From Selaginella moellendorffii (lineage: Eukaryota > Plantae > Lycopodiophyta), in the NCBI RefSeq assembly GCF_000143415.4, contig NW_003314304.1:1292841-1356840 (forward strand): DNA of 64,000 bases, given 5' to 3'. Shown here piece after piece: positions 3,430 to 51,557 of this stretch. Positions within the stretch are counted from its first letter, which is position 1, and every line of letters starts with the position of its first letter. Made by a program: the position numbers and the translations under genes. The notes under the pieces were generated by a model. The model was not told the DNA's origin. It ran no database searches and saw only the letters and a list, made by a program, of their open reading frames with translations.

Positions 3430-3518
3430 GACGGGAACCTGTTGGCCGGATATCTGGCTAGAATAAAGAAATTTATTGGCAAGGTCACAGGTTCGAATCC
3501 ACAGCCAGAGACCCAATC
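3430..3518 (+). mobile_element. tRNA-related SINE-like element, copy 2
   Basis: Near-identical to 2323-2410, with B-box GGTTCGAATCC. Confidence 0.45.
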
Positions 3519-3747: not shown

Positions 3748-3848
3748 AAGAGTGGGGAAAAGTCCGATGCTAGTTCGACCTGTCCTCTGGGCTGGAGATC
3801 ATGACTCACAGCCATTCGAAGGTTGTGGATTCGAACCTGTGACTTTGC

Positions 3849-4840
3849 CAAACGCACAAATTATCCAATTCTGACATTGGGAGGTACTGACAATAAATAA
3901 TAATACTGGGCTTTCAAAATTTGGTAATTGGAATGAGTACAATATAAATCTCTTAAGGAAGATTCATTAGAGGGCAAGTCTAGTGCCAATAGCTATAGTA
4001 ATTCTAATTCTAATAACATGTTATTATAGTTAAAAAGCTCATTTGGATCTCAGGACAAGATGAATGGTTTCCCTATATGCACTAGTCACCCCATTCTATG
4101 AGTCAATGATGCTAATTTGATCTTTACTGGCTAATGTGGAGTCGACAATGTTATTTTGAAAAAATTAAAGTACCCAAAACAGACTCATACTCTAAATACA
4201 TTAGTATGGAGTAATGTAATAGGACTCTGATCCTGTTGTGTTGGTCTCCAAGATATGAGTAATGATTAGTAGGGACAATTGGGGGCATTTGTACTCTATT
4301 GTTAGAGATGAAATTCTTAAGCATTTGCTGAGGATGCTTTTATTAATCAAGAATGAAAGTTAGGAGCTCAAATACGATTAAATACCATTTTAGTCTTAAC
4401 CATAGATGATGATGATTAGGGATTGGCAGATGTTATTTGGATAACAACGCCATCACCTCATGAAAAATCAAAGTCTTTGAGTTCCAAGAGGAGTATAGTT
4501 GCAAAGCTAAAACTTAAAGGAATTGATGGAAGGGTATTATTTGGAGTGAAGCTTATGGTTGGATGAAGAAACTTACTAAGTTTAGACATAGTAAAAATTA
4601 ATACATTAAGAGCTCTTTCTTGATTCTATAGGTGGTAATTTCTTAGTTGGTGAAGTGATTTGTTTGGTTAATTTTATTAATAAACAAGACCTCAACCTAG
4701 TAACTAGTGTTTTTTCCAAACTAGCTTCTTAGAGAGGCTATTTACTTTTGGTGGATAGAAGTTTGAAGCAATAATAGATTTGTGATGCCCTTAGATGTTT
4801 TGGGCTGCACATGCACTACATTGATGAACTCAACAAGTGT
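3849..4840 (+). pseudogene. 18S rRNA pseudogene fragment, 5'- and 3'-truncated and AT-eroded (copy 1)
   Basis: Degenerate 18S landmarks: aaattatccaattctgaca, gagggcaagtctagtgccaatagc, aaacttaaaggaattgatgg, tgtgatgcccttagatgttttgggctgcac. Confidence 0.93.
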
Positions 4841-6144
4841 ATGCCTATGTCAATATTAAAACCTTGACATTAACATTGGTAGAGTTGATATTAGAGTGAA
4901 ATGAGATATTTCTTCATAAGTATAATGCCAAAGATAAATTTTTGATCTATAATTAGTCAGATAGTTAGTGATTAATTAAGCCTCATTGGAAATTGATAAT
5001 TTGCTTCACTAGTTTTGACAAAGATAATATTGGTGATTTGGTTGTAACTTTATGTTGTTAATATTCATGCATTTGCTAGTTAGCAATTATACTGGCATTC
5101 AATAAATTGAGTGGTAAGTTGGGTTAGCTATATTATAGATGAAATTTTTTAGTAGGGTTGAGTTTTGGCTTTTCTTTGAAAAGTGACTTAATTAGTTAGT
5201 TTTGTAAAATGAAGAATTAGTGATTAATACTTAAATTGTTAGATCCTTGTTGGTTTGAGTTTGAAATTATTGATTATTGATGATTCTCATTGCACTTGTT
5301 ATAAAGTGTGTTACATGTTAAAATTTATAAAAGATGGTTTGGTGATCACTTGTCGAGCATGGCTTTTAAATTAATATAGATATACTCTTTATTAACTTTT
5401 GCATTATGAAGTTTTAGCCTGTGAATTTGCTAAGGTGGAAATTATAGGTTATATCATGATTTCTTTTTAAACATTGAAATTAGTCAGTATGAAATTTATG
5501 ATTGTTATTATATAGGATTTAGTTATAAACTTCTTTGAGCTTTTAGTTCTTGATAATCTGGGATAGTTAATTATCCTTATTAAATATTATAATTAATTAT
5601 TATTGCTAATAATTATATGCCATTCTATTCTATTTGGCAATGATTATCAATAATATAACTTATTTAAGTTAATACATTTCTCACAAAATATGAATATCAT
5701 AAATTTTTTTCTAGAGTTGTTTCTTTAGCAATGGTCTCAAGTGTGCATCAACAAGAATGTCAATCTTTTTAAAGGGGGGAGAACATATCATAAATAGTAT
5801 CAAAAGTTGTCTATTAGTAAAACTTTTTGAATATTTTTTTCTTTTTTTCTTTTTTTATGGCAGAAAGGTTAGTATTGTTAGACTTTTTATCAATCTCCAC
5901 ATAAGCTAGTTAAGAAATTAATTAATATATATGCATTTAGACCAAAAAGGCACTAAAGAAAGAAATCCTAGCTGTGATTGAGAATAGGTCATCATTGTCT
6001 CGCCATATCCAAGTCGACATCTGATAATCTATCACCTATTGAATATATTGAGAGACTAAGCTCAATATTGCAAGGGTTTTCAACATTAGCAAATGCAAAT
6101 TAACAATATAAATTTTTCATCACCAATGTCCAATATGCTATAAA

Positions 6145-6845
6145 CAAAGTTGGAATGCCTTCAGAAGTGACTGGAAAGGGGGGTCTGCTGCACCGACAAG
6201 ATACATAACGATCATAATCCTTAAATGCAAGGAGGTTTGTTACAGCTACCAAGTCTCTCCAGGTGGGTTTGTCCTTTATGACAAAGTGAACCTACAATTA
6301 TGAACACAGAATAACAAAGGCATGTCTAATCCGCAGCTTACTTCAATGGACACTTTAGCACTTTTGAGTGCCTTTGGTATGCTTTCTACAGCAATCCTTG
6401 CCGCTTTATCCAGAGGAAACCTGAAACACAATGCGAACTCAGTATACAAGAGGTAAGGTGTGAGTACAAACCCACCATAGCCGCACAAGATAGCTGGGAA
6501 CGCTATGTGCTTAACGCCCTCCTTGCAAGCAAGTGTTATAGCGTTCCTGTAATAGACAAAGCACAATGTATCAAATTTGCTACACACTCTTGTAAGTGAG
6601 ACCAAGATATTCAGCAGCTTCCGTGTCCCTGTCTTTGTAGAATTTTGGGCCTTGCATAACAATGATTTTAGGTGCTGGCAGTCCTCCTGAAGGGCTGAGA
6701 AACAAGTCCGTTAAAAGTTTTAAAAGGAAATGAGGAAAGACAGTTACGAAAGGAACCAGTAGCAAACCACAAACCAGTAGCAATACATATTTCTGAAAAG
6801 AGAAAAGCGCATGTCAAATGCCAAACACCCCTTTGCTTTACCTAT
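6145..6845 (-). pseudogene. Partial extra copy of the macrodomain 3' exons
   Basis: Repeats about 6957-7663 (GLPAPKIIVMQGP, HIAFPAILCGYGG, FPLDKAARIAVES). It lacks the 5' exons, and a deletion next to the small-exon donor shifts the phase. Confidence 0.8.
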
Positions 6846-6939
6846 CCTAAGTTATAATTTAGCAATATTGAGCTCAGTCTCTCAATATATTCAATAGGTG
6901 AGATATTGACTTGCAAGACAACAATGACCTAGAATATTC

Positions 6940-9138
6940 TCAATCACGGCTAAAAAAAGTTGGAATGCCTTCAGAAGTGACTGGAAAGGGAGGTCTGTTG
7001 CACCGACAAGATACGTAACGATCATAATCCTTAAATGCAAGGAGGTCTGTTGCAGCTACCCAGTCTCTCCAGGTGGGTTCGTCCTTTATGACAAAGTGAA
7101 CCTACAATTTTGAACACAGAATAACAAAGGCATGTCTAATCCAGGGAAGCTTACCTCAATGGACACTTTAGCAATTTTGAGTGCCTTTTGTACGCTTTCT
7201 ACAGCAATCCTTGCCGCTTTATCCAGAGGAAACCTGAAACACAATGCGAACTCAGTATACAAGAGGTAAGGTGTGAGTACAAACCCGCCATATCTGCACA
7301 AGATAGCTGGGAACGCTATGTGCTTAATGCCCTCCTTGCAAGCAAATGTTATAGCGTTCCTGTAATAGACAAAGCACAATGTATCAAATTTTGCTACACA
7401 CTCTGGCATACCTGTAAGTGAGACCAAGATACTCAGCAGCTTCCATGTCCCTGTCTTTGTAGTATTTTGGGCCTTGAATAACAATGATTTTAGGAGCTGG
7501 CAGTCCTCCTGAAGGGCTGAGAAACAAGTCCGTTAAAAGTTTTAAAAGGAAATGAGGAAAGACAGTTACATGATATCCAAGCCAGTAAAGGAACCAGTAG
7601 CAATACATATTTCTGAAAAGAGAAAAGCTCATGTCAAATGCCAAACACCCCTTTGCTTTACCTCTGTGTATCTGACCTCCAACAGGAACTACAATAGCGT
7701 CATTCTTTCCGTCTACAAACCACTCTTTTATGTCCCCGTTTTTAATCACGAACTTGCAAGAGCCGACTTTACAAACAAGCTTGAGGTCCTTTTCCTGATC
7801 AAAAGCCACTAAATCTCAAACCACAAACTCGGATAAACAAACAAAACGAGAGGTAGATTTGAACCTTGAGGTCCATCACTCTTATGCAGGGGTCCCTAAG
7901 AGGTCCGGGCTTGCAAGAGGTAAAGGGTTCGGGTACTTGAGGGTTCCCATTGACTGAAAACAGAAACAAGGTTATATAGCTATAATTGATGTACTGTACG
8001 TACCTAGGGGAAGGAAACCATCGGGTCTAACATCATATAACTCCGTCGCTTGTTCGTCTTCAGACTCATCCGGGTCTTCAGGCACATCTTCATCTTCAGA
8101 CTCAGATTCGTCCGCAGGCTCGGGATTTATATCGACTGGGTTTTCCTCTATGTCCTCTGCGGCGCTGTGTAGCTGTCCACTCACCTCTTGAGTCACTCCA
8201 TTGGCCACTTTCTGTCGCAGCAGCTCTCCAACAGGAACTACTGCGAATGTCCTGCAATCATCAGACCCTACATCGGCAATCTGGCGGCAAGCTTCCTCGA
8301 GGCCCTGTACTAGTTCGCCCATTACAATCTCGTTTGCGGATCAGAAGCATACAATACTCACAAGTGCGTCGATCCGAGTGGTGAAAACGCTTGTAAAATC
8401 GCTATCCATGTGATAATTTAGGTGTCTCGACGCAACGATTAGGTAAGTGTCTGCCGTAGTCAGCCGCTCCTGTGTGCACACACTTTCAGAATAACAAATT
8501 TCAACAAAAGAGTAAGTACCTTGTGGTAATAAAAAGGTAGACTGCTACTTTGCGGGGGGCTAGCATTTTTGAGACGGTAGAGAGAACTTGGACGGGTTAG
8601 CTTTTCGTCCTTCCCACTTCGGCACAGTATCACCAACGCAAGGGCCTGGCCAAATACATACACATGCGCGTCTCCAAGCACCACCACCAAGGACCTGTTT
8701 TGCGCACACCAATCCTATAAAACCAAAGTAAACATTCACAGAAACAGCAATAATCCATCTGACAAGAAGAGAGATTACCACATACCCGGCAATCTGATGA
8801 TCCTACCAGAGCCCGCAGCTCTTCATTCATCCTGCAAAAGAACCACCGATATTTTTTTGAAAAGTACAATGCACATACTCTTACTTTGTGAATGCGAGCT
8901 CCAGAGCTCGTGGAGTACCGAATGTTGACAGCTCCAGAGATGCTCGAATGTGATCCATGAGTCGAGATCGGCGTAACTTGAGAAGTTCGAGATGTACAGA
9001 ATAGAGGTGCACATCTCTTACGTCCGGATAAGCTGCATGGAAAATTAGCACAACTCGCTCCTGCACTCTCCCTAGCTCTGGCAAGCACACGATACGTGCA
9101 GTCGCATCCTGGGGCGGCTCGACTATCACTGCCTCCAT
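6940..9138 (-). CDS. Multi-exon gene: degenerate PP2C-like domain + acidic linker + degenerate macro (A1pp/MacroD-like) domain, copy 1
   Basis: A hand-spliced GT-AG model stays in frame from the ATG at 9138 to the TGA at 6940. Macro motifs: GDIKEWFVDGKNDAIV, LPAPKIIVIQGP, IAFPAI, FPLDKAARIA, VHFV. PP2C-like motifs: ALELAFTKMNEEL, VILCRSGKDEKLT, DTYLIVAS, GSDD. Confidence 0.65.
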
Positions 9139-9463
9139 CGCCACAGCACAGCCCTAAGCCCTATAGCCTTTTTACGTTAGAGTTATATTGAGTTTGCTTG
9201 CTTAATCCTTCGCCTTTGCGCAAAGGAGAGCTCCATTTCCCTGTTCTAAGCTCTGGAGCTCGTTTTATTGGGAAAAAGATATTCTAGCTCTGAAAGTTTC
9301 TACTTACGAGCCAATGATGCGAGTGGCATGGAGAAATCCTTGTGGATCGCATCTACTGGCGAGCTAGAAGAAGAAGAGCAACAAAAACTTGTTCAAGGCT
9401 CTTTCTAATCCAAAAAGGCATGAAGCCCAGCTGTAAAGGTGAGTTCACCTTTTTCTCGTTTCT

Positions 9464-9473
9464 CTATATAAAC
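9464..9473 (+). promoter_or_regulatory. TATA box of the GDSL gene (duplicate near 18715)
   Basis: CTATATAAAC about 45 nt upstream of the ATG at 9515. Confidence 0.5.
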
Positions 9474-9514
9474 GGGCTTTCCGTAATAGGTTCTCTCGTG
9501 AAGGTTTTGGCGAG

Positions 9515-10483
9515 ATGAAGACGTCGTCGAAGATTTTAGTGTTCTTGTTTGCGATCTTGGCTCTCTGCGCGTGCGTGTATGGGAGGTCAGTTCCTCAGCT
9601 GCGGACTATCTACATGGGAGACTCAATCTTTGATGTTGGAACTAACAAGTACGTGAAGAACTCTGTTTCTCGTTGTGATTTTGTGCCGTATGGGAAGACA
9701 AGGTATAACCAGCCATCAGGAAGGTGTAGCGATGGGTTTCTAATTCCAGATCTGATAAACAAAGTGATCGGTTTGCCCTTTTCAAAACCATTCTTGGGCT
9801 TGAAAGGTGGGAGCCAACTTCCACTAAGCATCAACTTTGCGTCAGACGGTAGTGGACTGCTTGATTCTACTCACTCCGACTGGGGTGTCGTGTCGTTTAA
9901 TGAGCAGCTAAAACAACTTGGACAGCTAGCCAACAAGATCCCCATGATGAATCTCAATGACTTTGTGGTTGTGATATCTTCGGGTGGCAATGACATTGCG
10001 GCAAATCTTCAAAACCTTGCTAATGTAGACTTGGAAGCAATGCTAGTGTTATTGGAGAAAGGCTTGGAGCAACTTTATAAATATGGATTCAGGAAGATTG
10101 TCTACTCTAGCCTTGGGCCGTTAGGCTGTGTGCCTATTGTCACGTCGGATGGAAATTGTGTGAGAGAGATCAACGATTTAGTAGAACAATTCAATTGGCA
10201 AGCTCGGGCGATTGTTTTGGGGGTGGCAAAGAAATTCCCAGGGATGAGAGGTGCATTTGTTGACGGCTATTCACTGATCAAATCGTACGTGGAGAACCCA
10301 AATAAGTTTGGATTCCAGAATGGAGGGGGTTGTTGCCCCAATTGCCTATCACACAAAAATACCTTGAGCGGGCTGTGCAGGAATCCAAGTGATTATGTTT
10401 TCTGGGATTTAATTCACCCAACAGAGCACACGTACACACTAGTGACGAAAGAATTCATGAAACAAATCAAGAAAATCTTGTAA
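9515..10483 (+). CDS. Secreted GDSL/SGNH esterase-lipase, intronless
   Basis: Signal peptide, GDSIFDVG, GRCSDG, INFASDGSG, GGND, FWDLIHPTE. Confidence 0.93.
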   Translation: MKTSSKILVFLFAILALCACVYGRSVPQLRTIYMGDSIFDVGTNKYVKNSVSRCDFVPYGKTRYNQPSGRCSDGFLIPDLINKVIGLPFSKPFLGLKGGSQLPLSINFASDGSGLLDSTHSDWGVVSFNEQLKQLGQLANKIPMMNLNDFVVVISSGGNDIAANLQNLANVDLEAMLVLLEKGLEQLYKYGFRKIVYSSLGPLGCVPIVTSDGNCVREINDLVEQFNWQARAIVLGVAKKFPGMRGAFVDGYSLIKSYVENPNKFGFQNGGGCCPNCLSHKNTLSGLCRNPSDYVFWDLIHPTEHTYTLVTKEFMKQIKKIL

Positions 10484-13445
10484 CTTCACAGAGCATTCTC
10501 ATTCACAGAGCTTGCAACCAGGCAGAAGAAAGCTGCCGAATGGAAGCAACGTATCCATCCTTCGCCTGTTCTTCATTGCGAGCTGGCATTTGTGAGGCAT
10601 CAGCAGTTTCTTTCTACTTCGACATGGAGCAACATGCCCCTCCAGCTATGACCAGCTCTAGGCCTTGCTCTACCACAGTTGCTCCCACCAGCGAGGCCAT
10701 ATTTAATAGATGGTGTTTTAGGTGAAATTAAAAAGTTAAAGAAAAGGAATATTAAAAGTAAAAAAAAAAAATCCGCCTTAAAATTAACTTTGCTCCAACC
10801 TTTATGAGTTAATAGTTACTATCGCATTTACTTTAATGAGTTTCTTTATTTAACCATGCATTTTTCGTTAGCTTAGATTTAAACAATTCACAGCCATCGG
10901 ATCAGCTAATCTGACGGTTAGGATGCTGTGTAAATATATCTAAAGGCTAGTGTTTAGGGTAAGTTTTGAGGGGGCTGGTTTTGCTGTTGGCGGCGGCGCT
11001 GGGGGGAGGAGGCGTTATGTTTTTCTCAAACCATCAAAATGCACACTGGTGGGGTGCCCATTCTCAACGTGGCTACTCAGTATTCGTTTTGGGCTGTCGC
11101 TACTGTTTTGCACAGTACGTTGAGGCGGCCAAAGCGAGAGGAAGTCGGGGAATCGAAGCCCCCGGCTGCCCCACACTTAGATGTAGGATTTTCGATTGTG
11201 TGAAACTACTAACAAGCAGGATCGAAGACCAGCTACCCAGCCCTCTCTTGGGGATTTCCTCTTTGAGGAGAACCCCTCCAAAACAAAAAACGGAGAAGAA
11301 GCATTCCTGTCGTTTTTTCTTATTCGAAACAGTGTTTGCCTTGTTGCTTGACAAGGATTAGGGCCCCCTCTGTTCCGCTCCATCCCCAAGTCTTCACAAT
11401 GAAAATTAAGCTGGGGAAAAATTGTCATGCAGGAACATGATCAAGAACTCGTCGTGTGCAAGGCCTCCCTGCAAGCTTGATAAACAACAAAGAACAGGGA
11501 ACTGCAAACCATAAGAACACTTCATACTCGCGAACTTCAGTTTCTTCCGATTGCTCATGACCCCCAAAGGAGCGTTTCTCTTTGGATCTAGCTAGGGTAG
11601 GGAGCGGCAGGGACAGGATCACCGGCATTTCATCGAGCTTGTAGCTGATCTTGATCATACCTTGGACGGCCATGAATTTCTGGTATCATACCCCTCTCTT
11701 AGCACTGCTTATTAGATCAGTGCACTTCTTCTTGCATGACTTTCCTTGTCCTGCCTGAGATGAATGCGTCTGATTTTCGATTTTCAGATAATTTCCTAGC
11801 AGCGTCTACCTGGAAGAGCTCCCAAACGCATACTGTCCGATATGTGCTAGCTGGTGGTGGTGAGAGCGTACCATGTTAATTAGATTTAACTAGTATCAAC
11901 AAATATCTGTGGATTGGATTTCAGGCATTACAACAGACTAGGATAAAACTTCTTCCTTAGAAAAGAAAAATGTGAGAGAAAGACACTGACACTAGAGGTA
12001 CTTTGAGCTCTATCTAGTATATTTTCTAATTGTAAATCATTTTATTGTCGATTTTCTATCGAATCAATATATCTAGACTTCATACAGGTAACACTTGCTT
12101 TATCTTTCTTGCTTTTCCAACGTTGGTTTCAGTTTGATATTTTAGTGTCAATCTTCATTCCGGAAAGTTTTCTTCTAATTCTCAAGCTGCTTTGACAAGT
12201 TCCTCCAGAGGCAAGATGCTTTTTACTTAAGTTCTTTCAAAGAGTTTCTATCGATCTTATACTCTGCATGGCTGTGGCCTTGCAGTGTCTGCTTCAGCCA
12301 AGGTAGCGTTTGGGGACATGCCAAGGACGTGATCCTCCCAGTAAGGCGCAAGTGGAGCTTCACATATATTTATATCATGCAACTCAAATTAACCAGGTAA
12401 CTCTCAGAGTCAAGAGACAAACCGGTTCTCAACACTTAATACTTTGACCAGTCCAGAAATAGGCGTGATCGAGGTCGCTACTTTCTCATGCTCCTTGTCG
12501 CAATTCTTTTGAGCCAGGGTCCTGGAGATACAAAGTCAAGCTCTACAAAGCAAGTATGAAGAGAGACACACGCCTTTACTTGGCTCATTCTGATGTCTGT
12601 ATTATTATCATATATATGATGTGGAAGTTTTAAAATTGTTTAAAGTTTGCAAAAATGTGAAGTATAAATTTTTTTTATAAAAATAAAAAACTATTAATAA
12701 AAAATAAATATAAAAATGTTTATAGCTAAAAAATGATAAGAAATTAATAAAAAAATTTAAAACTTCAAGTTGGTATAGTGTATATGTGTCAATTATAACT
12801 ACATTTGCTATAATGCCCACAACAAAATTCTAATTTTTCTTTCTTAAGATCTTCATTACAAACTTTTTTTGTTTTTGGGTGTCCCAGAAGTTTATGAATT
12901 TTTTGTAGCAACATACCAAGCACTTCCAAATGTTTAATGTCAATAGGATAAAGTACACTCTCATGTGTTTTATGATAAGAATCAAGTAAGTAACATATGT
13001 TAGCATAGAGTTAAAAAAATGGTAGTAGTTGTGTGAGCACAAGGTAATCCAACTTTTTATCATCCAAAGCATGAGCAAGACTATGTTAGTATGTTAACCA
13101 CACAAGTATGCTCTTGTGTCTATATTTCAAATATAGTAAGATCTAAGGGCATGAGAAACCTTATGAAATTGCATCATAAAGAGGTTTCATAATAGCTCAA
13201 TTATTATTTTTGGATTGATGCTCAAGTAGAGGATAGCCAAGGTCAAGTCCAAGTCCAGCCAAAATGAGTAAAGGCTGTGTGCCTATGTTCTTATTGTGCA
13301 TAAGCTTCACTCAGCTATTGAGGGCTTTGGCTACCCTTTGGCACTTGAAATATGAACCTTACAACTATGCCATCTTAGTTGATGCTGGTTATACATTGCC
13401 TTTACTGCATCTTTGGGTGCTAGGACATATGTGCTTTGCATTAAC

Positions 13446-14830
13446 TACTTAGTTGATCTTATTAGTAGTCATATGCTTGTCTCAAAGATTAAGCCATGAA
13501 TGTATAAATATAAATTTTTTTATATTGTGAAATTGTGAATGGCTTATTAAATCAATAATAGTTTATTTGATAGTACCTTACTACTCAGATAACTATAGCA
13601 ATTCTATAACTAATATGTGTAAAGAGTCCTGACCTTCAAAAGGCATGCACTTACTAGATTCAAGACTAATGTGTACTCATTTATATTCTCAGTGGTTCAT
13701 GATAACTTGTCAAATCATATGGTCCTCGTGTCAGTGATACTTAAATTAAATTTCTACCCTATCAACTTTTGATGGTAGGATATAATAGGGAATTAGGGTT
13801 TGATTTTGAGATACAGCTACCACATCTAGGGAAGGTAGCAAACGCACGAATTATCCAATTCTGACATTGGGAGGTACTGACAATAAATAATAATACTGAG
13901 CTTTCAAAATTTGGTAATTGGAATGAGTACAATATAAATCTCTTAAGGAAGATTCATTAGAGGGCAAGTCTAGTGCCAATAGCTATAGTAATTCTAATTC
14001 TAATAACATGTTATTATAGTTAAAAAGCTCATTTGGATCTCAGGACAAGATGAATGGTTTCCCTATATGCACTAGTCACCCCATTCTATGAGTCAATGAT
14101 GCTACTTTGATCTTTACTGGCTAGGGTGTGGAGTCGACAATGTTATTTTGAAAAAATTAAAGTGCTCAAAACAGACTCATACTCTAAATACATTAGTATG
14201 GAATAATGTAATAGGACTCTAATCCTGTTGTGTTGGTCTCCAAGATATGAGTAATGATTAGTAGGGACAATTGGGGGCATTTGTACTCTATTGTTAGAGA
14301 TGAAATTCTTAAGCATTTGCTGAGGATGCTTTTATTAATCAAGAATGAAAGTTAGGAGCTCAAATATGATTAAATACCATTTTAGTCTTAACCATAGATG
14401 ATGATGATTAGGGATTGGCAGATGTTATTTGGATGACAACACCATCACCTCATGAAAAATCAAAGTCTTTGAGTTCCAAGAGGAGTATGGTTGCAAAGCT
14501 AAAACTTAAAGGAATTTATGGAAGGGTATTATTTGGAGTGAAGCTTGTGGTTTGATGAAGAAACTTACTAAGTTTAGACATAGTAAGAATTAATAGATTA
14601 AGAGCTCTTTCTTGATTCTATAGATTGTAATTTCTTAGTTGGTGAAGTGATTTTTTTGGTTAATTTTATTAACAAACAAGACCCCAACCTAGTAACTAGT
14701 GTTTTCTCCAACCTAGCTTCTTAGAGAGGCTATTTACTTTTGGTGGATAGAAGTTTGAAGCAATAATAGATTTGTGATGCCTTTAGATGTTTTGGGCTGC
14801 ACATGCACTACATTGATGAACTCAACAAGT
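13446..14830 (+). pseudogene. 18S rRNA pseudogene, 5' end retained, 3'-truncated and AT-eroded (copy 2)
   Basis: Begins tacttagttgatcttattagtagtcatatgcttgtctcaaagattaagccatg versus canonical TACCTGGTTGATCCTGCCAGTAGTCATATGCTTGTCTCAAAGATTAAGCCATG. Has internal deletions, and no ITS or 5.8S follows. Confidence 0.95.
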
Positions 14831-16172
14831 GCATGCCTATGTCAATGTTAAAACCTTGACATTAACATTGGTAGAGTTGATATTAGAGTGAAATGAGATA
14901 TTTCTTCATCAATATATTGCAAAAGATAAATTTTTGATCTATAATTATTCAGATAGTTAGTAATTAATTAAGCCTCATTGGAAATTGATAATTTGCTTCA
15001 TGAGTTTTGACAAAGATAATATTGGTGATTTGGTTATAGCTTTATGTTATTAATGTTCATGCATTTGCTAGTTAGCAATTATACTGACATTCAATAAATT
15101 GAGTGGTAAGTTAGTGTCAATGCAATGGCATAGTGAGTCCAAAGAAAATAGTCTCTATAATAGACCCATAGGAGGGTGTTAGCTATATTATAGATGAACT
15201 TTTTTAGTAGGGTTGAGTTTTGGCTTTTCTTTGAAAAGTGACTTAATTAGCTAGTTTTGCAAAATGAAGAATTAGTGATTAATACTAAACTTATTAGATC
15301 CTTGTTGGTTTAAGTTTGAAATTATTGATTATTGATAATTCTCATTACACTTGTTATAAAGTGTGTTACATATTAAAATTTATAAAAGATGGTTTGGTGA
15401 TCACTTGTTGAGCATGGATTTTAAATTAACATAGATATACTCTTTATTAGCTTTTGCATTATGAAGTTTTGGCCTATGAATTTTCTAAGGTGGAAATTAT
15501 AGGTTATATCATGATTTCTTTTTAAACATTGAAGTTAGTCAGTATGAAACTTATGATTGTTATTATATAGGATTTAGTTATAAACTTCTTTGAGCTTTTG
15601 GTTCTTGATCATCTGGGATAGTTGATTATCTTTATTAAATATTATATTTAATTATTATTGCTAATAATCATATGCCATTCTATTCTATTTGGTAATGATT
15701 ATCAACAATATAACTTATTTAAGTTAATGCATTTCTCACAAAATATGAATATCATGAGTTTTTTCTAGAGTTGTTTCTTTGGCAGTGGTCTCAAGTGTGC
15801 ATCAACAAGAATGTCAATCTTTTTAAAGGGGGGAGAACATATCATAAATAGTATCAAAAGTTGTCTATTAGTAAGACTTTTTGAATATTCTTCTTTTACT
15901 GTTATAATAGAAAAAAGGTTAGTATTGTTAGACTCTTTATCAATCTCCACCTGAGCTAATTAAGAAACTAATTATTATATATGCATTTAGACCAAAAGGG
16001 CACTAAAGAAAGAAATCATAAATTATAAATGAGAAATTTATATTGTTAATTTGCACTTGCTAATGTTGAAAACCCTTGCAATATTGAGCTTAATCTCTCA
16101 ATATATTCAATAGGTGATAGATTATCAGATATCGTCTTGGATGTGGCAAGACAACAATGACCTAGAATATTC

Positions 16173-18389
16173 TCAATCACGGCTAAAAAAAGTTGGAATG
16201 CCTTCAGAAGTGACTGGAAAGGGAGGTCTGTTGCACCGACAAGATACGTAACGATCATAATCCTTAAATGCAAGGAGGTCTGTTGCAGCTACCCAGTCTC
16301 TCCAGGTGGGTTCGTCCTTTATGACAAAGTGAACCTACAATTTTGAACACAGAATAACAAAGGCATGTCTAATCCAGGGCAGCTTACCTCAATGGATGCT
16401 TTAGCACTTTTGAGTGCCTTTTGTACGCTTTCTACAGCAATCCTTGCCACTTTATCCAGAGGAAACCTGAAACACAATGCGAACTCAGTATACAATAGGT
16501 AAGGTGTGAGTACAAACCCGCCATATCTGCACAAGATAGCTGGGAACGCTATGTGCTTAACGCCCTCCTTGCAAGCAAGTGTTATAGCGTTCCTGTAATA
16601 GATAAAGCACAATGTATCAAATTTGCTACACACTCTGGCATACCTGTAAGTGAGACCAAGATACTCAGCAGCTTCCATGTCCCTGTCTTCGTAGTATTTT
16701 GGGCCTTGAATAACAATGATTTTAGGTGCTGGCAGTCCTCCTGAAGGGCTGAGAAACAAGTCCGTTAAAAGTTTTAAAAGGAAATGAGGAAAGACAGTTA
16801 CATGATATCCAAGCCAGTAAAGGAACCAGTAGCAAACCACGAACCAGTAGCAATACATATTTCTGAAAAGAGAAAAGCTCATGTCAAATGCCAAACACCC
16901 TTTTGCTTTACCTCTGTGTATCTGACCTCCAACAGGAACTACAATAGCGTCATTCTTTCCGTCTACAAACCACTCTTTTATGTCCCCGTTTCTAATCACG
17001 AACTTGCAAGAGCCGACTTTACAAACAAGCTTGAGGTCCTTTTCCTGATCAAAAGCCACTAAATCTCAAACCACAAACTCAGATAAACAAACAAAACGAG
17101 AGGTAGATTTGAACCTTGAGGTCCATCACTCTTATGCAGGGGTCCCTGGGAGGTCCGGGCTTGCAAGAGGTAAAGGGTTCGGGTACTTGAGGGTTCCCAT
17201 TGACTGAAAACAGAAACAAGGTTATATAGCTATAATTGATGTACTCTACGTACCTAGGGGAAGGAAACCATCGGGTCTCACATCATATAACTCCATCGCT
17301 TGTTCGTCTTCAGACTCATCCGGGTCTTCAGGCACATCTTCATCTTCAGACTCAGATTCGTCCGCAGGCTCGGGATTTAAATCGACTGGGTTTTCCTCTA
17401 TGTCCTCTGCGGCGCTGTGTAGCTGTCCACTCACCTCTTGAGTCACTCCATTGGCCACTTTCTGTCGCAGCAGCTCTCCAACAGGAACTACTGCGAATGT
17501 CCTGCAATCATCAGACCCTACATCGGCAATCTGGCGGCAAGCTTCCTCGAGGCCCTGTACTAGTTCGCCCATTACAATCTCGTTTGCGGATCAGAAGCAT
17601 ACAATACTCACAAGTGCGTCGATCCGAGTGGTGAAAACGCTTGTAAAATCGCTATCCATGTGATAATTTAGGTGTCTCGACGCAACGATTAGGTAAGTGT
17701 CTGCCGTAGTCAGCCGCTCCTGTGTGCACACACTTTCAGAATAACAAATTTTCAACAAAAGAGTAAGTACCTTGTGGTAATAAAAAGGTAGAGTGCTACT
17801 TTGCGGGGGGCTAGCATTTTTGAGACGGTAGAGAGAACTTGGACGGGTTAGCTTTTCGTCCTTTCCACTTCGGCACAGTATCACCAACGCAAGGGCCTGG
17901 CCAAACACATACACATGTGCGTCTCCAAGCACCACCACCAAGGACCTGTTTTGCGCACACCAATCCTATAAAACCAAAGTAAACATTCACAGAAACAGCA
18001 ATAATCCATCTGACAAGAAGAGAGATTACCACATACCCGGCAATCTGATGATCCTACCAGAGCCCGCAGCTCTTCATTCATCCTGCAAAAGAACCACCGA
18101 TATTTTTTTGAAAAGTACAATGCACATACTCTTACTTTGTGAATGCGAGCTCCAGAGCTCGTGGAGTACCGAATGTTGACAGCTCCAGAGATGCTCGAAT
18201 GTGATCCATGAGTCGAGATCGGCGTAACTTGAGAAGTTCGAGATGTACAGAATAGAGGTGCACATCTCTTACGTCCGGATAAGCTGCATGGAAAATTAGC
18301 ACAACTCGCTCCTGCACTCTCCCTAGCTCTGGCAAGCACACGATACGTGCAGTCGCATCCTGGGGCGGCTCGACTATCACTGCCTCCAT
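16173..18389 (-). CDS. Degenerate PP2C-like + macrodomain fusion gene, copy 2
   Basis: Same exon structure as 6940-9138. The small exon carries an extra in-frame 18 nt (EICIATGSWFATGSFTGLDI). Confidence 0.65.
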
Positions 18390-18765
18390 CGCCACAGCAC
18401 AGCCCTAAGCCCTATAGCCTTTTTACGTTAGAGTTATATTGAGTTTGCTTGCTTAATCCTTCGCCTTTGCGCAAAGGAGAGCTCCATTTCCCTGTTCTAA
18501 GCTCTGGAGCTCGTTTTATTGGGAAAAAGATATTCTAGCTCTGAAAGTTTCTACTTACGAGCCAATGATGCGAGTGGCATGGAGAAATCCTTGTGGATCG
18601 CATCTACTGGCGAGCTAGAAGAAGAAGAGCAACAAAAACTTGTTCAAGGCTCTTTCTAATCCAAAAAGGCATGAAGCCCAGCTGTAAAGGTGAGCTCACC
18701 TTTTTCTCGTTTCTCTATATAAACGGGCTTTCCGTAATAGGTTCTCTCGTGAAGGTTTTGGCGAG

Positions 18766-19726
18766 ATGAAGACGTCGTCGAAGATTTTAGTGTTCTTGTT
18801 TGCGATCTTGGCTCTCTGCGCGTGCGTGTATGGGAGGTCAGTTCCTCAGCTGCGGACTATCTACATGGGAGACTCAATCTTTGATGTTGGAACTAACAAG
18901 TACGTGAAGAACTCTGTTTCTCGTTGTGATTTTGTGCCGTATGGGAAGACAAGGTATAACCAGCCATCAGGAAGGTGTAGCGATGGGTTTCTAATTCCAG
19001 ATCTGATAAACAAAGTGATCGGTTTGCCCTTTTCAAAACCATTCTTGGGCTTGAAAGGTGGGAGCCAACTTCCACTAAGCATCAACTTTGCGTCAGACGG
19101 TAGTGGATTCTACTCACTCAGACTGGGGTGTCGTGTCGTTTAATGAGCAGCTAAAACAACTTGGACAGCTAGCCAACAAGATCCCCATGATGAATCTCAA
19201 TGACTTTGTGGTAGTGATATCTTCGGGTGGCAATGACATTGCGGCAAATCTTCAAAACCTTGCTAATGTGGACTTGGAAGCAATGCTAGTGTCATTGGAG
19301 AAAGGCTTGGAGCAACTTTATAAATATGGATTCAGGAAGATTGTCTACTCTAGCCTTGGGCCGTTAGGGTGTGTGCCTATTGTCACGTCGGATGGAAATT
19401 GTGTGAGAGAGATCAACGATTTAGTCGAACAATTCAATTGGCAAGCTCGGGCGATTGTTTTGGGGGTGGCAAAGAAATTCCCAGGGATGAGAGGTGCATT
19501 TGTTGACGGCTATTCACTGATCAAATCGTACGTGGAGAACCCAAATAAGTTTGGATTCCAGAATGGAGGGGGTTGTTGCCCCAATTGCCTATCACACAAA
19601 AATACCTTGAGCGGGCTGTGCAGGAATCCAAGTGATTATGTTTTCTGGGATTTAATTCACCCAACAGAGCACACGTACACACTAGTGACGAAAGAATTCA
19701 TGAAACAAATCAAGAAAATCTTGTAA
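18766..19726 (+). pseudogene. GDSL lipase duplicate with an 8-bp frameshifting deletion
   Basis: ggtagtggactgcttgattctac in copy 1 becomes ggtagtggattctac at about 19107, splitting the ORF into 125 aa and 212 aa pieces. Confidence 0.9.
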
Positions 19727-20327
19727 CTTCACAGAGCATTCTCATTCACAGAGCTTGCAACCAGGCAGAAGAAAGCTGCCGAATGGAAGCACCGTATCCA
19801 TCCTTCGCCTGTTCTTCATTGCGAGCTGGCATTTGTGAGGCATCAGCAGTTTCTTTCTACTTCGACATGGAGCAACATGCCCCTCCAGCTATGACCAGCT
19901 CTAGGCCTTGCTCTACCACAGTTTCTCCCACCAGCGAGGCCATATTTTTCTTTCGACGGTGTCATGTTGACGAAGGTGATGGATTTGATCGTCACAGCAA
20001 TTCATCACAAACTACAGCAGCTTTCTAGTGGGACATTCAGCACTCATATCACATCCCCACACAACAGACTCACAGCAGCAGTGTGATCTCTTCGGCTGTA
20101 TGCATGCCAAATAGTTTTCATCAGCATCACCACTTCCTACGACCACCAGACTTTGGTGAGCGGCTCAGAAGGTCTTCTACTCTTCCACAATCCCTCTGCT
20201 CGATGATTTGTGCTGACAACCTAATGGCTATTTATTCTCTCTCAAAGAGTCCTGCCATGCTTCTCTAGCAGCTCCATCTTAAGGAAATTGATTGAATAGT
20301 TCTGTTAATAATTCTTGTAATAAAAAA

Positions 20328-31820: not shown

Positions 31821-33338
31821 TTAATGCATTTTTGCTGCCGCTTTTTGAGCCAGATACAAGCTTGCCAAGCGAGGAGACTCGATTCCTCTTGGCTCAATGA
31901 ATCCTAGAGTCTCATTCCCAGTGCTTCCCAGCGATTGTATCGTGTTTCCAATGGCCCAGTTTGCTGCTTGTGGAGGTTTCACAACTTCCAACACTTTGGT
32001 GTGACAGTTCCACACAACACTAAATCCAGAAGTATAGCCATGATGTTTGTATGGCCTATTGCGCAGGCTGATCGTCCCATTTTCAAACTTCATGCTGTCA
32101 TACAGGATCCCAGTTGCAAAATGAGCGTGAGGCTCCGCGTGTGAGCTCCCATATGCGGTGCTGTTAAAGAAAACATTTGGACCATTTGCTTGGTCCCGGG
32201 TCATGTAGCTGAACTGGGAGCTTCCTCCTTGGATGACGCTGTTCTTGACGAGGATCTGGGAGCCTGGAAAGGCAATGGCGAGATCAGCAAATTTTGGACC
32301 TTTCATCGGGCCCGGAATAGTCCGGATGAGATTCAAGCCCTCGACTGTGATCCTCTTTCCAGTGACAGTCATGGTATCGCCTCCAAAGTCGACAGCCACG
32401 ACATTTCTCACCCAAGAGTCCTCCACCTGAGCGATGTTGAGAAAGGTGCCACGGCCGACAGGGAGAACTTTGTCCTGGACAGCCTTGAAGTTCTCGAGAC
32501 CGACGTGGGATACTCGTCCAGAGATCTCCACCTTGACCAAATAAGCCGGCTGTGACGAGCTCAGGTACCTGAGATCAACACGAAATGGAACCGGGATGTC
32601 GAGAAACACCATGTTCTTTTCGCCGTTAACTCTGGAAACTCTGCGCTCGATGGAAGTAACCGCAAAGTTTCCCCATCTCTCGCTCATATTCATCATCTGG
32701 ATCCACCTGGAAGTCATCGGCCAGACGATCGAGACGAGATCGCCGGGTTTGAATCCACAAGACGAGTCGAGCTTCACATAGTTAGAACCGGAGGGAACAG
32801 TCTCGACAATAGCAGCTCTGTGACCAACCTCTGTGATGGTTTGCTGTGGACTCTCGACTGAGAACAAAGCGTGGACGTCCATGCCATCCTCGGCTATGGA
32901 AACATTTGCGTGGAGGATGGTTTCGCTACTGCTGCTCCCGGTGATGAGAATTCCACTGGTGTTGATGGTGAAGTGGTGGCCTCGAACGTCGAAATTTCCA
33001 CTTGAGAGCTGGATTGCTCCCCGGAAACCTGTGCAGGGATCGAGTGGCAAGGAGGAGAGCTCGTTGATGGCATGCTGGATGGATTCACCGTCGCTCTTGT
33101 TGGTGTCTTTACAGTTGCGAGCAGGATAGAGGACAACTTTCACTGGTACCTCTGGCAGTTTGGCATCTCTTCCCAAGTATCCCACCGACGAAAAATCCAT
33201 GATCGTGTCACCTGCATTGGTGGGTTTGTAGACGAGTTTGCTGGTGTTGGCGTCAAGAGATACCCAGTAGATTGGAACGCCTTGAGTTACATGTAGGCAA
33301 GAAAATATTGCGATCATGAAGAGCACAGAAAGAGCCAT
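31821..33338 (-). CDS. Secreted parallel beta-helix (pectate-lyase-like) protein, bacterial-like, paralog A (probable chimera)
   Basis: Signal peptide MALSVLFMIAIFSCLHVTQG from the ATG at 33338, then DFSSVGYLG, IQHAINE...GFRGAIQL, GPNVFFNS, PHAHFATGILYD, WNC, PPQAANWAIG. Intronless. Confidence 0.8.
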   Translation of the reverse strand: MALSVLFMIAIFSCLHVTQGVPIYWVSLDANTSKLVYKPTNAGDTIMDFSSVGYLGRDAKLPEVPVKVVLYPARNCKDTNKSDGESIQHAINELSSLPLDPCTGFRGAIQLSSGNFDVRGHHFTINTSGILITGSSSSETILHANVSIAEDGMDVHALFSVESPQQTITEVGHRAAIVETVPSGSNYVKLDSSCGFKPGDLVSIVWPMTSRWIQMMNMSERWGNFAVTSIERRVSRVNGEKNMVFLDIPVPFRVDLRYLSSSQPAYLVKVEISGRVSHVGLENFKAVQDKVLPVGRGTFLNIAQVEDSWVRNVVAVDFGGDTMTVTGKRITVEGLNLIRTIPGPMKGPKFADLAIAFPGSQILVKNSVIQGGSSQFSYMTRDQANGPNVFFNSTAYGSSHAEPHAHFATGILYDSMKFENGTISLRNRPYKHHGYTSGFSVVWNCHTKVLEVVKPPQAANWAIGNTIQSLGSTGNETLGFIEPRGIESPRLASLYLAQKAAAKMH

Positions 33339-33499
33339 TTTTGCTCGAGCTTCCCTGATTTTTTCTCTTTGATTCATAGTTCGTACAGGAAATGATATAG
33401 TCACTCTTGCTTTGGACTTTAGCCTGGAACTAATGACAACGTCATGTCTGATGAAAAGATCGAGACAAAATGCAGGCCAAGTGAGAAAGACTTTTAACT

Positions 33500-33580
33500 T
33501 AACCATCATTTTCAAAGTGATGAAACCTCGTCGTACATGTGGAATAATTTTCCTCTTGGAGATTCTGGAAATGGATTGTG
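33500..33580 (-). pseudogene. DYW-domain C-terminal relic
   Basis: ISRISKRKII followed, after a frameshift, by RFHHFENDG. Matches 41320-41352. Confidence 0.7.
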
Positions 33581-33623
33581 TCGTGGAATGCTCTGGACCA
33601 AACTGGCAATTGAAAAGGCTTAA

Positions 33624-33700
33624 TCTTGGGCAAATGCTGCAATGACGGTGTTCCATGATGTTCTATCCTGTTCGGGCATTTTGTAAACCATTACTTCTAA
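33624..33700 (-). pseudogene. Short PPR fragment related to 31020-31097
   Basis: tcttgggcaaatgctgcaatgacggtgttcca is identical to 31020 onward. Confidence 0.75.
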
Positions 33701-33808
33701 ATAGAGGACGAATCATGGCATCTCGCGAGGTCCAGAAAAGAAATCTTGATTAATAATCTGATTATTAGCTGAAGGCTATAAACACGATCACTAACACCAG
33801 CTATTTAC

Positions 33809-33878
33809 TATTAGTAATGGGATTCAAACCCATGCCCTTGCAGACTAGTACCTGAAACTAGAGGCTTAGATCAACTCG
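33809..33878 (-). pseudogene. tRNA-Leu(CAG) pseudogene, 5'-truncated
   Basis: Minus strand CGAGTTGATCTAAGCCTCTAGTTTCAGGTACTAGTCTGCAAGGGCATGGGTTTGAATCCCATT follows the plant tRNA-Leu(CAG) pattern, with TTC>TTT in the T-loop and the 5' acceptor strand missing. Confidence 0.8.
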
Positions 33879-33965
33879 AAATTGTACAAATGCATTTTCA
33901 CATCCAAGGTTTATCATTGTTAGCACTTGATTGAAACCAATTTCTTTGTAAACTGACTATGCCTA

Positions 33966-35322
33966 CAGTGGATAAAGTGTAAGAAAACCAACTATGTCTA
34001 CTATGGACAGTGATTATTGAACATTTTATTTGATCTAATTGAATTATAAATTTATCATTTGGTAAATTGATTAATCAATTCATGAGCTTATATTCATGAG
34101 TTGATTTATCACTTCATGATGTTTCTGGGTTGCCTATATTTAAAATTTTGAACTAAATATAGTTATTAATATATCTAGCTATTTTTCTTATTTTAAAATT
34201 AACTAATATCAATATCAAGTATTGAACCTTAATTCTACTGTAAAAACCTAAATAAAACCACTTATTCATAGGGGTTTAAATATAAAGGGAAAGGGTTTAT
34301 AGAAAAAAATTAATCTTTTCTAATGCATTGTGCAGAAATGACAATCTAATGGACAGTCTAGATATTATAGCATCGTTGCTTGATACTCACTTGGAATTTA
34401 AAATTGAAAAAGAGAATTCAAAGCTCAGATAGGCTAAAAATATTTGGAAGATTTTGCATGATCAATGAGTTCCTTCCACTTCCATGACTAATATCCAGCT
34501 GCATCACAACAAAAGAAGACTATGAACTTGAAAGTCAAATTAAAAGATATTTAGGGTTAAGTGTATTAATTTTAAATAGTATTGGGTTGAGTTACGATAC
34601 TTGAGGTTAAATGTTCTTAAATTTGAATAGTGACCTCTTAAGAAGTATAAATTTAAGAATTTACACTACTAAGATGTGAATGCAACCTATAAAAGCCTTA
34701 AGGAAAGAATACTAGCCAGAAAAAAAAGCACCATAAAGCAAGATATTTATATGAAATGTTACAAGCCTTAAACCAACTCCTCTCTACACTCTAAATATTA
34801 AACACAACATCCCAGCCACAAATGCTTAATTGCAAGTCACTTTAAGCATTATTAAAGATCCTTTCACACCACCTAACCACCTCACCTCCAAACCTTATAC
34901 CATGAGTTTTTTTGTTTCCTAACATTAAATAACACAACTATATCACTCTATAGCCATCTTGGATGTAATGTTTATTACATTCTACACACCTATTTGATGT
35001 TATCTTTTGCATGCCTAAAGGTTGAAGTCTTGCTTTACTTCTTCAGCCCTTTATAGAACCTTCACCATCATACTTGGAAACTTAACCAAAGTGAAGTAGT
35101 TGGTCTAATAATTCTCCAGTATTTTAAACTCTATGATTTATAATAAATTCACCAATAAACTATTATGATCAATCAACTATTGAATTGATGAAACAAATCA
35201 TCAATTATCAAAGCATTCATTGATCAATTAAATCATGAACTGATCAATCAACTCATGATTTGATCAATTTATAATTCAATTTAACTATAATTGATCAATA
35301 ATCAAGCACACTTTTTCCACTA
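33966..35322. mobile_element. Non-autonomous TIR DNA transposon, Tc1/mariner-pogo-like, with TA target-site duplication
   Basis: TA|CAGTGGATAAAGTGT ... ACACTTTTTCCACTA|TA. Imperfect inverted homology continues about 150 bp (aattgaattataaatt, tcatgagttgatt.atca.ttcatgat). No transposase ORF. Confidence 0.7.
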
Positions 35323-37422
35323 TAGCCTTCTTTACTGGATAATTCAGCAAGATGGCTTGGTGTTGCAAAATGTTTAAGAGTGTGTTCATTCACACATTGG
35401 CAATTTCATTTTTAGACAGCTGAATTTCTTATTGAAAAGCTGATAGATAACACTTGAATCAGTTGTAACTTATCATGTCATGATACAAGCCTGCCAAGAA
35501 TTGCGGGACTTGTTTGGGTTGGGCAGAATTAGGTACCCAGGCGAAAAATGGGCCCCTTGCCCTAGTGGGCTTGCAAGAGTTTTGTAAACTCTAGAACCAA
35601 GATGGAGATCTTAGTACAAACAAAGCAAGTGAAGATTGAAAGGCTTCGGAATGCACTTCTTGCTTGCTGTGGAACTATGGATACAATCCTTCAGGAGGAG
35701 GAAGAGGAAGAGGCGGAATCCAGCCGGCACTCTTCGGCAGACGAGAGCTCCGATGACGAGGTACGAATGGTGCTTAATACCAGTGGATTCTTTTGCACAG
35801 GAGAACCACTACGCAAGTTTTGCTCAATGCTCAGTGCTTGGGCCCTGGGGCTGAGCTAGAAGTGAGAAAGTTGTGGATCTCTGCTTGTGAGCATTTGTTT
35901 TGAACAGCAACAACAACTGACCAGTTGTTTTGAAGTGCAAAGAACAATGTCCCTTCATTGTATGCAACAGTTTGTTTTAGAAATTCATCACATCTGGCAA
36001 ATGCATAGTTTAACTACAAGACTTCACAATTGTATCTTTCACCAACCAATCCACTCTAATCTTCATAGGTATTACTTTATTCTCTTCTTTTCCTTCTGTT
36101 GAATCACTTTTAGTTCTTGTTCAACAACAAAAGCATTTGTAGATTGTGGTGGCTTCTTCACATCTTGCCCAGAAACATCTTATAATGATGGCACAACACG
36201 CTGGACAATGGCCTTCCTCATGCCTCAAGTCTTATGCTAAACCTCCCAAGGTTGTGATCTTGTGAGAGAAATGATACCAATCAAATTAATTGCTATGGCA
36301 AGTTTCACCTGCGGAAGTATCTCCACAGTTATAAGTACCATTGGCTGCTTGGATAAAAAATGTCAATGGGGAACTCTAGATGTGTGATTGGCTTGGATTG
36401 GTCTTTAGAGTTTAGTTCTGTTAGGTTGATTTTATGTATACTGTTCTAGAAGGAATAGGCCAGATTACTTGACATATGAGAAAAAATTGGTATGTAAGGA
36501 TATGTCAATATGGTCATTACCCTTAATTTATTAACTTAAGTTTTGAAGAATTTTCGTAAGTTTAAAACTTAACCCCCTGTTTACCTTAAAGTGTTTTGAT
36601 TCATACTTTAACAAACCCTTGTTGAATCAAGTCTCCCCCTCTAACTCCCATCTTTCAAGCTCCAAAGCCCCACAATTCATGTGGGATTTTGATTGGTCCC
36701 AGAATTTTTCACAAGTTTTCGCAGAATTTCTCGTGGCACAGTGCAAAGATCCTTCATGGGTCATCAAGCACTAGAAGAACATTTAGGTGTGAGATTGGAA
36801 CCACGATAGAGAGCCAAAAACAGATCTAGCGACTGGTGGAGGTCAATTTGAATGAGAGATCCCTTGATCTAGAGCTGATTGAAGCATGCTGAGTAAGAGA
36901 GAGTTGGATAGGTTGAGATCAAGTGGCAGTGCTAGATTTGCGCACTATCTTGCGTGATTAGCAGCCCAAATCTCCTTGCAGCAATCAAAGAGCTCTTAAT
37001 GGAATAATGGCAAGTTAAGTGACTTAACTTCTGTAGCTTCCTAAAATTTAAGGGTAAAGGTAAATATAAGGGATATACATAAGCATTGATACATAGCTTA
37101 AAGGTTTATGTGAAACCAAATTACTTAAACAATCACTTTTAACTTTAAGGGTAAGGGTCAGTGCAAAAAAGCCCTAATACCAAAGTAATATTATACTCAT
37201 AGTTAGGCATACAATGGTCCAAATGTAGGTAGAGGGTTTGGCACTGGATGATAACCAAAACTTATCATCCAAAATTGTACTGAAAATATTGGACCAAAGA
37301 AGCATGCTTTCCATTGTGAACAACCTTATTAAGGAATTTGAAGTGATTTTTTGTTTTGACTAGTTTGATTTGATGTGGAAGTATTTTTTTAAATAACAAA
37401 ACTTTACAGTGGAACATTTTTG

Positions 37423-38958: not shown

Positions 38959-39528
38959 GCTTGAGAGATTATATACTGCTCTAAACTATCAAAATCAGCC
39001 TACATTTTATAGTGGAAAACCACGACAAAATGTTATAAGAGAGTTTAATACGGCATGGCAAAGGTTGGAGAAAGAACATTTTCATTCTTTCAGGACAAAT
39101 TCAAGAGGATTCGAATCGATATCTGGAAACACCGTGAATCTTATACGTTGACCGGTCTTTGGCCGCGCAGATACATTGTCCTATCCTGGAATTATAAACC
39201 CTTCTACCGCATGTAAATAATTTCACATCTTGATTTGCATTGCTTCCTTGATTTTCCCATATGAAACTTTGGCCTTGTTCCTGTTACCAAAGAAGAGGAA
39301 GATTGCACTGAGAAGAATATGGACTTCGTGTCTGATTTTTTACACTGTCACTACAAATTTCTGACACTTACGCTTCCAATTATCTGGCGTTTATGTGGTT
39401 TTGCAAACCAACTCGGCATGCAAACGAGGTGTCCTAGAAACGTTTTTGTGTTGCTTATTCATCCTAGACATATGTTGAAAGTTTCAAAGGGTATATCCAT
39501 AAATTTGACGTGTATTGACTTTCTTTGC

Positions 39529-51475: not shown

Positions 51476-51557
51476 TTAAAGGCTGTAGTTAACCTAATAA
51501 AAACATAGTTTAGTAATAGCATTAATAACTCTTAATCCGCCACCTTTTGGAGTTGTT

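What the first reader, a model, noticed from the sequence alone, without database searches (positions are those of the whole stretch)
6940..9138. Double-pseudoenzyme fusion: dead PP2C-like domain + acidic linker + degenerate macrodomain (second copy at 16173-18389)
Seen in sequence: the scattered minus-strand ORFs splice through short GT-AG introns into one frame, in both duplicate copies. The N-terminal ~210 aa follow PP2C motif order: IFHAAY (cf. VFDGHG), ALELAFTKMNEEL, SLVVVLGDAHVYV, VILCRSGKDEKLT, ERLTTADTYLIVASRHL (cf. DEFLILASDGL), EEACRQIADVGSDDCRTFAVV (cf. GSxDNITVVVV). The metal-binding Asp residues of DGH and DG are gone. The C-terminal macrodomain keeps GDI, LPA..I...GP and IAFPAI, but AIVVPVGGQIHR replaces the N-x-A-N...GGGG loop that MacroD hydrolases use. 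Inference: a scaffold, reader or decoy linking phospho-signalling and ADP-ribose signalling. I do not know of this architecture being described, and the ORF track does not show it.
Basis: partly seen in the sequence, partly recalled or inferred. Interest (0 to 1): 0.85.

Follow-up and report, generated by a model that had tools for sequence, protein, structure and literature searches.

The report
Spikemoss pseudo-PP2C–macrodomain fusion gene family
The spikemoss Selaginella moellendorffii has a young, expressed, multi-copy gene that joins a probably inactive phosphatase fold to a probably inactive ADP-ribose-binding fold; the fusion is real and seems undescribed, but its function is untested and only the phosphatase half is clearly kept by selection.

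Summary
The gene is real and the organism is Selaginella moellendorffii. RNA confirms 11 GT-AG introns, and one transcript contig joins both halves. RNA also shows a 43-nt micro-exon inside the open stretch of the macrodomain, so the gene has 12 exons: 529 aa (copy 1) and 535 aa (copy 2, SELMODRAFT_419713). The N-terminus has a PP2C/PPM fold by three structure searches and a language-model search, though the model is low-confidence. It lacks the two main metal aspartates. The C-terminus descends from plant MacroD (five shared intron positions) and has lost the catalytic asparagines, glycine loop, aspartate and tyrosine. Homologues were found only in S. moellendorffii. Five of 11 genomic copies are broken. 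Omega is 0.56 for the PP2C part (p=0.0009) and 0.98 for the macro part. Neighbouring genes differ between copies. A bridge between phospho- and ADP-ribose signalling is therefore unsupported. Most likely this is a weakly constrained, non-catalytic PP2C-fold interaction protein carrying a vestigial macrodomain. The scan has noted this family at least five times elsewhere in this genome.

The parts
8885..9138 (-). Copy 1 exon 1 (aa 1-84): start of the PP2C-like domain, degenerate motifs 1 and 2
8786..8831 (-). Copy 1 exon 2 (aa 85-100)
   Evidence: (contig only)
8520..8714 (-). Copy 1 exon 3 (aa 101-165): beta strands, motif 5 without its Asp, shortened flap region
8362..8469 (-). Copy 1 exon 4 (aa 166-201): motif 8 with Arg180 in place of the Asp
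8004..8304 (-). Copy 1 exon 5 (aa 202-301): motif 11 (D216 kept) and acidic linker
7865..7953 (-). Copy 1 exon 6 (aa 302-331): proline-rich end of the linker
7662..7794 (-). Copy 1 exon 7 (aa 332-375): macrodomain start, GDI kept, catalytic loop 1 lost
7570..7612 (-). Copy 1 exon 8, 43-nt micro-exon; shrunken from about 106 nt in a MacroD paralogue
7412..7516 (-). Copy 1 exon 9 (aa 390-424), macrodomain
7285..7359 (-). Copy 1 exon 10 (aa 425-449): diphosphate loop with Leu445, Arg447, Gly449 in place of Ser, Gly, Tyr
7155..7233 (-). Copy 1 exon 11 (aa 450-476), macrodomain
6940..7101 (-). Copy 1 exon 12 (aa 477-529): last macro strand and helix, variable tail, stop
16173..18389 (-). Copy 2, intact, 12 exons, 535 aa; identical to EFJ19013.1 (SELMODRAFT_419713); 11 substitutions and a 6-aa insertion against copy 1; its variants are seen in RNA
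6141..6843 (-). Broken partial copy (intron 7 to the 3' end; 92% identical; micro-exon 45 nt and out of phase; intron-9 donor lost)

Best explanation
A young, dispersed gene family seen only in S. moellendorffii. It arose by DNA-level fusion of a decayed PP2C gene, an acidic linker and a copy of a plant MacroD gene. Shown: one spliced transcript, both folds, loss of key catalytic residues, birth and death of copies, and moderate purifying selection on the PP2C-like half. Inferred: the protein has no phosphatase or ADP-ribose hydrolase activity and probably does not bind ADP-ribose. It most likely acts through the surface of its PP2C fold, as a non-catalytic binder or competitor for partners of active PP2Cs (TAB1-like logic). 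The macrodomain is a folded but largely vestigial passenger.
For: Splicing and a single transcript. PP2C fold: language-model hits at 0.95 to PPM clusters; all top 50 Foldseek hits; top 37 VIA hits at Z 7.2-4.6 against 3.6 for unrelated folds; a Streptophyta PP2C cluster at TM 0.53. Metal ligands lost. Macrodomain: Pfam E 1.5e-14, TM 0.84 to a plant Macro cluster, five of six paralogue introns shared in position and phase. Selection: omega 0.56 (p 8.6e-4) for PP2C, 1.06 linker, 0.98 macro. No indels in 603 nt of exons 1-4 against 10-12 per 630 nt of intron, and every exon 1-11 indel in open copies is in frame.
Against: No partner, localisation or phenotype data. The model is low-confidence (pLDDT 43). 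Omega 0.56 is weak constraint and rests on only three independent lineages. Against the intron rate both domains look similarly constrained (non-synonymous ratio 0.64 and 0.70), so 'macro is neutral' is not secure. In one raw RNA run exons 1-3 had far lower depth than exon 5 (0.1-2.6 against 15-19), so short transcripts without most of the PP2C part may be common.
Confidence: 0.5

Rival explanations
1. A nearly neutral family without a specific function. Copies survive when they land beside a promoter, and selection only removes frameshifts and misfolding changes.
For: Five of 11 copies are broken and one more has lost its first ATG. Macro and linker omega are about 1. Expression is modest, roughly 6 FPKM summed over copies in one run. 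No homologue in another species.
Against: PP2C-part omega is significantly below 1. About 10 stop codons were expected across three lineages at the intron rate and none is seen, although copies were chosen as open. All 22 splice sites are kept in those lineages.
Confidence: 0.3
2. One reading: a scaffold or reader in which the macrodomain still binds ADP-ribose and couples it to phospho-signalling partners.
For: The adenine-binding GDI motif is kept. The domain still models as a macro fold. One lineage lies head-to-head with a PARG gene.
Against: Loop 1 with its asparagines and aspartate is deleted, and the tyrosine is glycine in all copies. The window copies also replace the diphosphate-loop Ser and Gly with Leu and Arg (51, 67); these positions bind diphosphate and distal ribose in MacroD (PMC5413906). 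Macro omega is 0.98. Other lineages neighbour unrelated genes.
Confidence: 0.1
3. A fast-evolving double decoy that absorbs pathogen effectors aimed at PP2Cs or macrodomain/ADP-ribose proteins.
For: Species-limited expansion, tandem and dispersed copies, fast turnover and high omega are typical of defence genes (general knowledge).
Against: No NLR or receptor partner among the neighbours seen. No test showed positive selection. No infection-induction data.
Confidence: 0.1

Closest known systems
PPM/PP2C phosphatases (Pfam PF00481; PPM1A, PPM1K, Arabidopsis TAP38, ABI1, HAB1)
   Same: Fold and order of secondary structure; motifs 5, 8 and 11 recognisable in order.
   Different: No Pfam or phmmer match, 10-17% structural identity, DGH and DG aspartates gone, flap region shortened.
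PPM-family pseudophosphatases TAB1 and PHLPP2 (PMC12002173)
   Same: PP2C fold that cannot form the two- or three-metal site; expected to act by binding.
   Different: Those are old, conserved animal proteins that keep one metal. This is a young plant family fused to a macrodomain; whether it keeps a metal (E27, Q/E123, D216 remain) is untested. An independent origin is inferred.
MacroD-type macrodomains (PF01661; E. coli YmdB, O. iheyensis MacroD, human MacroD1/2; plant At2g40600-like genes, the last named from my own knowledge)
   Same: GDI, LPA..I...GP, IAFPAI and G-F-P motifs; fold TM 0.84; five intron positions shared with a Selaginella paralogue.
   Different: Asn pair, glycine loop, catalytic Asp and Tyr missing; about 20 residues deleted; fused behind a PP2C-like domain.
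Non-binding macrodomains such as macroH2A1.2 (own knowledge)
   Same: Macro fold kept with a disabled ligand pocket.
   Different: Those are strongly conserved with known protein roles; here omega is near 1.

Membership tests
PPM/PP2C phosphatase | PP2C alpha/beta sandwich fold | tested here: met
   model confidence low
PPM/PP2C phosphatase | Sequence match to PF00481 | tested here: not met
PPM/PP2C phosphatase | Motif-2 DGH aspartate | tested here: not met
   No Asp in either possible register; exact register not fixed
PPM/PP2C phosphatase | Motif-8 DG aspartate | tested here: not met
   Arg180; top ungapped match to a Selaginella PP2C
PPM/PP2C phosphatase | Motif-11 aspartate | tested here: met
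   D216 in window copies, Glu in other lineages
PPM/PP2C phosphatase | Metal-dependent phosphatase activity | not testable with these tools
   needs an assay
Macro superfamily (PF01661) | Profile match above the curated cut-off, and macro fold | tested here: met
   54.4 bits against cut-off 22
MacroD hydrolase | N-x-x-N plus glycine-rich loop 1 and catalytic Asp | tested here: not met
   alignment to YmdB; roles from PMC5413906
MacroD hydrolase | Diphosphate loop S-T-G-x-Y | tested here: not met
   L-C-R-Y-G in window copies; S-C-G-x-G in other lineages
MacroD hydrolase | Adenine-binding G-D-I | tested here: met
   G351-D352-I353
MacroD hydrolase | ADP-ribose binding or hydrolysis | not testable with these tools
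   needs ITC and a hydrolase assay

The most novel reading that the evidence does not exclude
A lycophyte-born double pseudoenzyme in which both dead domains have been repurposed, as a scaffold joining PP2C partners to ADP-ribosylated or macro-binding proteins, or as a two-domain decoy, spreading as a precise start-to-stop unit into new promoters.
Probability: 0.12. Interest if true: 0.75.

Novelty: new variant of a known kind. Interest (0 to 1): 0.38.

Why it matters
It is a clean case of a new gene built from two decayed enzymes, with several copies at different stages of life and death. It shows that profile-based PP2C counts in Selaginella miss PP2C-fold pseudophosphatases, a class that is well studied in animals (TAB1, PHLPP2). 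It would matter more if a binding partner or orthologues were found. As it stands it is a species-limited curiosity and does not open a known question.

Tried and rejected
Pfam, phmmer against the PDB, and hhalign against a Selaginella PP2C did not detect the PP2C link; only fold and feature searches did. A global pairwise alignment to that PP2C scored no better than shuffles (the macro part of that script failed and was redone). Scans of viral, prokaryotic and metagenome contigs found no relatives. A RecA match to the micro-exon region was rejected: about 6 bits per copy, summed over concatemers, and the segment is explained by MacroD homology. Retention of the open-frame stretch 7661-7517 was rejected by RNA. 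dN/dS rows for L002 are invalid (frameshift) and were not used. Fixed linkage to PARG or to a PP2C gene was rejected, since each occurs at one locus type only. Paper searches for the architecture and gene ids found nothing relevant. The G188E paper search was blank, so I do not equate Arg447 with that mutant beyond its position in the loop. No tRNA or clear terminal repeats were found around the unit (83, 87).

Full report
Observation. Six-frame translation and self-BLAST show the described peptides on the minus strand at 9138-6940, a 97.9% duplicate at 16078-19947, and a 92% partial copy at 6141-6843. A first splice model gave an open 512-aa frame with these exact ends. RNA laid on 6000-10800 showed 11 joints, all GT-AG on the minus strand, and first mates on the plus strand as expected for a minus-strand RNA. 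It also split my 153-nt intron into two introns around a 43-nt exon. The corrected gene has 12 exons and 529 aa; copy 2 has 535 aa. One 1431-nt contig covers exon 1 through the macro exons, so the halves are one transcript. The contig runs are only guessed to be RNA, but they are spliced. Many RNA variants match copy 2, including its 18-nt insertion, and some match neither copy, so several copies or alleles are expressed. Rough level in one run is about 6 FPKM for all copies together.

Identity. Exon 1 found only two real hits among 1.84 billion proteins, both from Selaginella moellendorffii. Copy 2 is identical to EFJ19013.1 (SELMODRAFT_419713). Copy 1 is SELMODRAFT_419711, whose JGI model skips the micro-exon, while RefSeq XP_024540744.1 has it. 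Three searches of 5.8 billion proteins returned family members only from this species, apart from one weak metagenomic macrodomain. These searches are limited by length and shared words, and other Selaginella species may be missing, so restriction to the species is likely but not shown.

Method note. Searches used single exons or open frames by reference, or database proteins by id. P0024, a stored database protein, happens to equal copy 2.

N-terminal domain. Sequence methods see nothing. Language-model features give PPM-type phosphatase clusters at 0.95. An AlphaFold model is poor (pLDDT 43), yet all top 50 Foldseek hits are PP2C-family. The top 37 VIA hits are also PP2C-fold proteins, at Z 7.2-4.6 against 3.6 for the best unrelated chain, and Atlas shapes agree. 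These share one model, so there are two independent lines, not four. Against a canonical Selaginella PP2C from locus L001, motifs 5, 8 and 11 find their best ungapped match in the expected order. Motif 8 has Arg180 for Asp, motif 5 has Gln123 (Glu in other lineages), and motif 11 keeps Asp216. Motif 1 fits the QERV stretch only as the third-best match. No DGH Asp exists either way. PPM enzymes need two or three metals (PMC12002173), so activity is very unlikely. A single residual metal site is not excluded.

Macrodomain. Pfam Macro scores 54 bits. The Atlas model matches a Streptophyta Macro cluster at TM 0.84. A Selaginella macro paralogue in L002 has introns at phases 1, 2, 2, 2, 0 at the same positions as ours, and its 106-nt exon corresponds to our 43-nt exon, which points to DNA-level descent with internal deletion. 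Against YmdB the Asn pair, glycine loop and catalytic Asp are gone and Tyr126 is Gly. In MacroD these residues hold the distal ribose and diphosphate, and Y126A abolishes activity (PMC5413906). The window copies also carry Leu445 and Arg447 at the loop's Ser and Gly. Only the adenine GDI motif remains. Hydrolysis is very unlikely and binding is doubtful; both are inferences.

Family and selection. Nine more genomic copies were fetched. All share the 12-exon layout at 72-93% DNA identity. Six of the 11 have an open frame, in three lineages, and one of these six (L007) has lost the first ATG. Five carry frameshifts or stops. Some pairs are probably haplotypes. Codon models on the six give omega 0.56 for the PP2C part (p=8.6e-4 against 1), 1.06 for the linker and 0.98 for the macro part; broken copies give 0.73, 1.02 and 0.94. 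Measured against intron divergence instead, non-synonymous change is 0.64 (PP2C), 0.70 (macro) and 1.39 (linker) of expectation. The macro result therefore depends on the yardstick: weak constraint is possible, strong constraint is excluded. Exon indels are rare and in frame, which could reflect avoidance of nonsense-mediated decay as well as a need for the domain.

Context. Neighbours differ by lineage: GDSL lipase (window, L007), PARG (L003, L005), aldo-keto reductase with a PP2C downstream (L001), isochorismatase (L002), FAM32A-like (L006). Similarity between lineages begins only 5-20 nt before the ATG and ends shortly after the stop, with introns included. I could not identify the mechanism of this movement.

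Mechanism. The best reading is a non-catalytic PP2C-fold binder with a vestigial macrodomain (0.5). Rivals are a near-neutral family (0.3), an ADP-ribose reader scaffold (0.1) and a defence decoy (0.1). The fusion, folds, residue losses and selection values are shown; the binding role is inferred by analogy with TAB1 and PHLPP2.

Novelty. No paper in the library describes the architecture or names these genes. Databases label it hypothetical or macro-containing. Both parts are known kinds, and pseudo-versions of both exist, so this is a new variant. Earlier notes of this scan report the same family on other pieces of the genome; they are not independent support. Interest 0.38.

Noticed in passing
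window 6940-9138 against L001, L002, L003, L004, L005, L008: Dispersed copies share sequence only from 5-20 nt before the ATG to shortly after the stop, introns included; upstream flanks are unrelated and often carry telo-box-like motifs, and most copies sit head-to-head with an unrelated gene. Suggests repeated movement into existing promoters; mechanism unexplained.
   Followed up: partly
window 9515-10483 and 18766-19726 (+): GDSL lipase gene head-to-head with each copy; the second is split by an 8-nt deletion.
   Followed up: partly
window 5969-6120: Inverted copy of the gene's 3' untranslated region behind the broken partial copy, giving 46-nt inverted arms with 6862-6907; read-through RNA could form a hairpin.
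   Followed up: no
window 8500-9138: In run X21 depth falls from 15-19 at exon 5 to 0.1-2.6 at exons 1-3, and RefSeq has 5'-truncated models starting at aa 186 and 288: possible short linker-plus-macro transcripts.
   Followed up: partly
L002 17277-19675: Another degenerate MacroD-like gene with a proline-rich N-terminus, 5 kb from a fusion copy; its loop 1 and diphosphate loop are also altered.
   Followed up: partly
L001 12760-13701: Intronless canonical PP2C with a signal-peptide-like start, 600 bp downstream of a fusion copy; not detectably its parent.
   Followed up: partly
window 3476-3506 and 3821-3851: 31-nt inverted repeat containing a tRNA T-loop-like GGTTCGAATCC; no tRNA gene called.
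   Followed up: no
window 3849-5970 and 13839-16020: AT-rich 2-kb segment duplicated downstream of both copies; related AT-rich repeats lie downstream of L007, L004 and L008.
   Followed up: no
window 20292-45606 and 50123-54098: Cluster of at least six intronless PPR genes, an ELO elongase, three related ORFs at 31821-41067 (the one tested has no Pfam hit), an aspartic-protease-like gene and an ankyrin-PGG gene.
   Followed up: no
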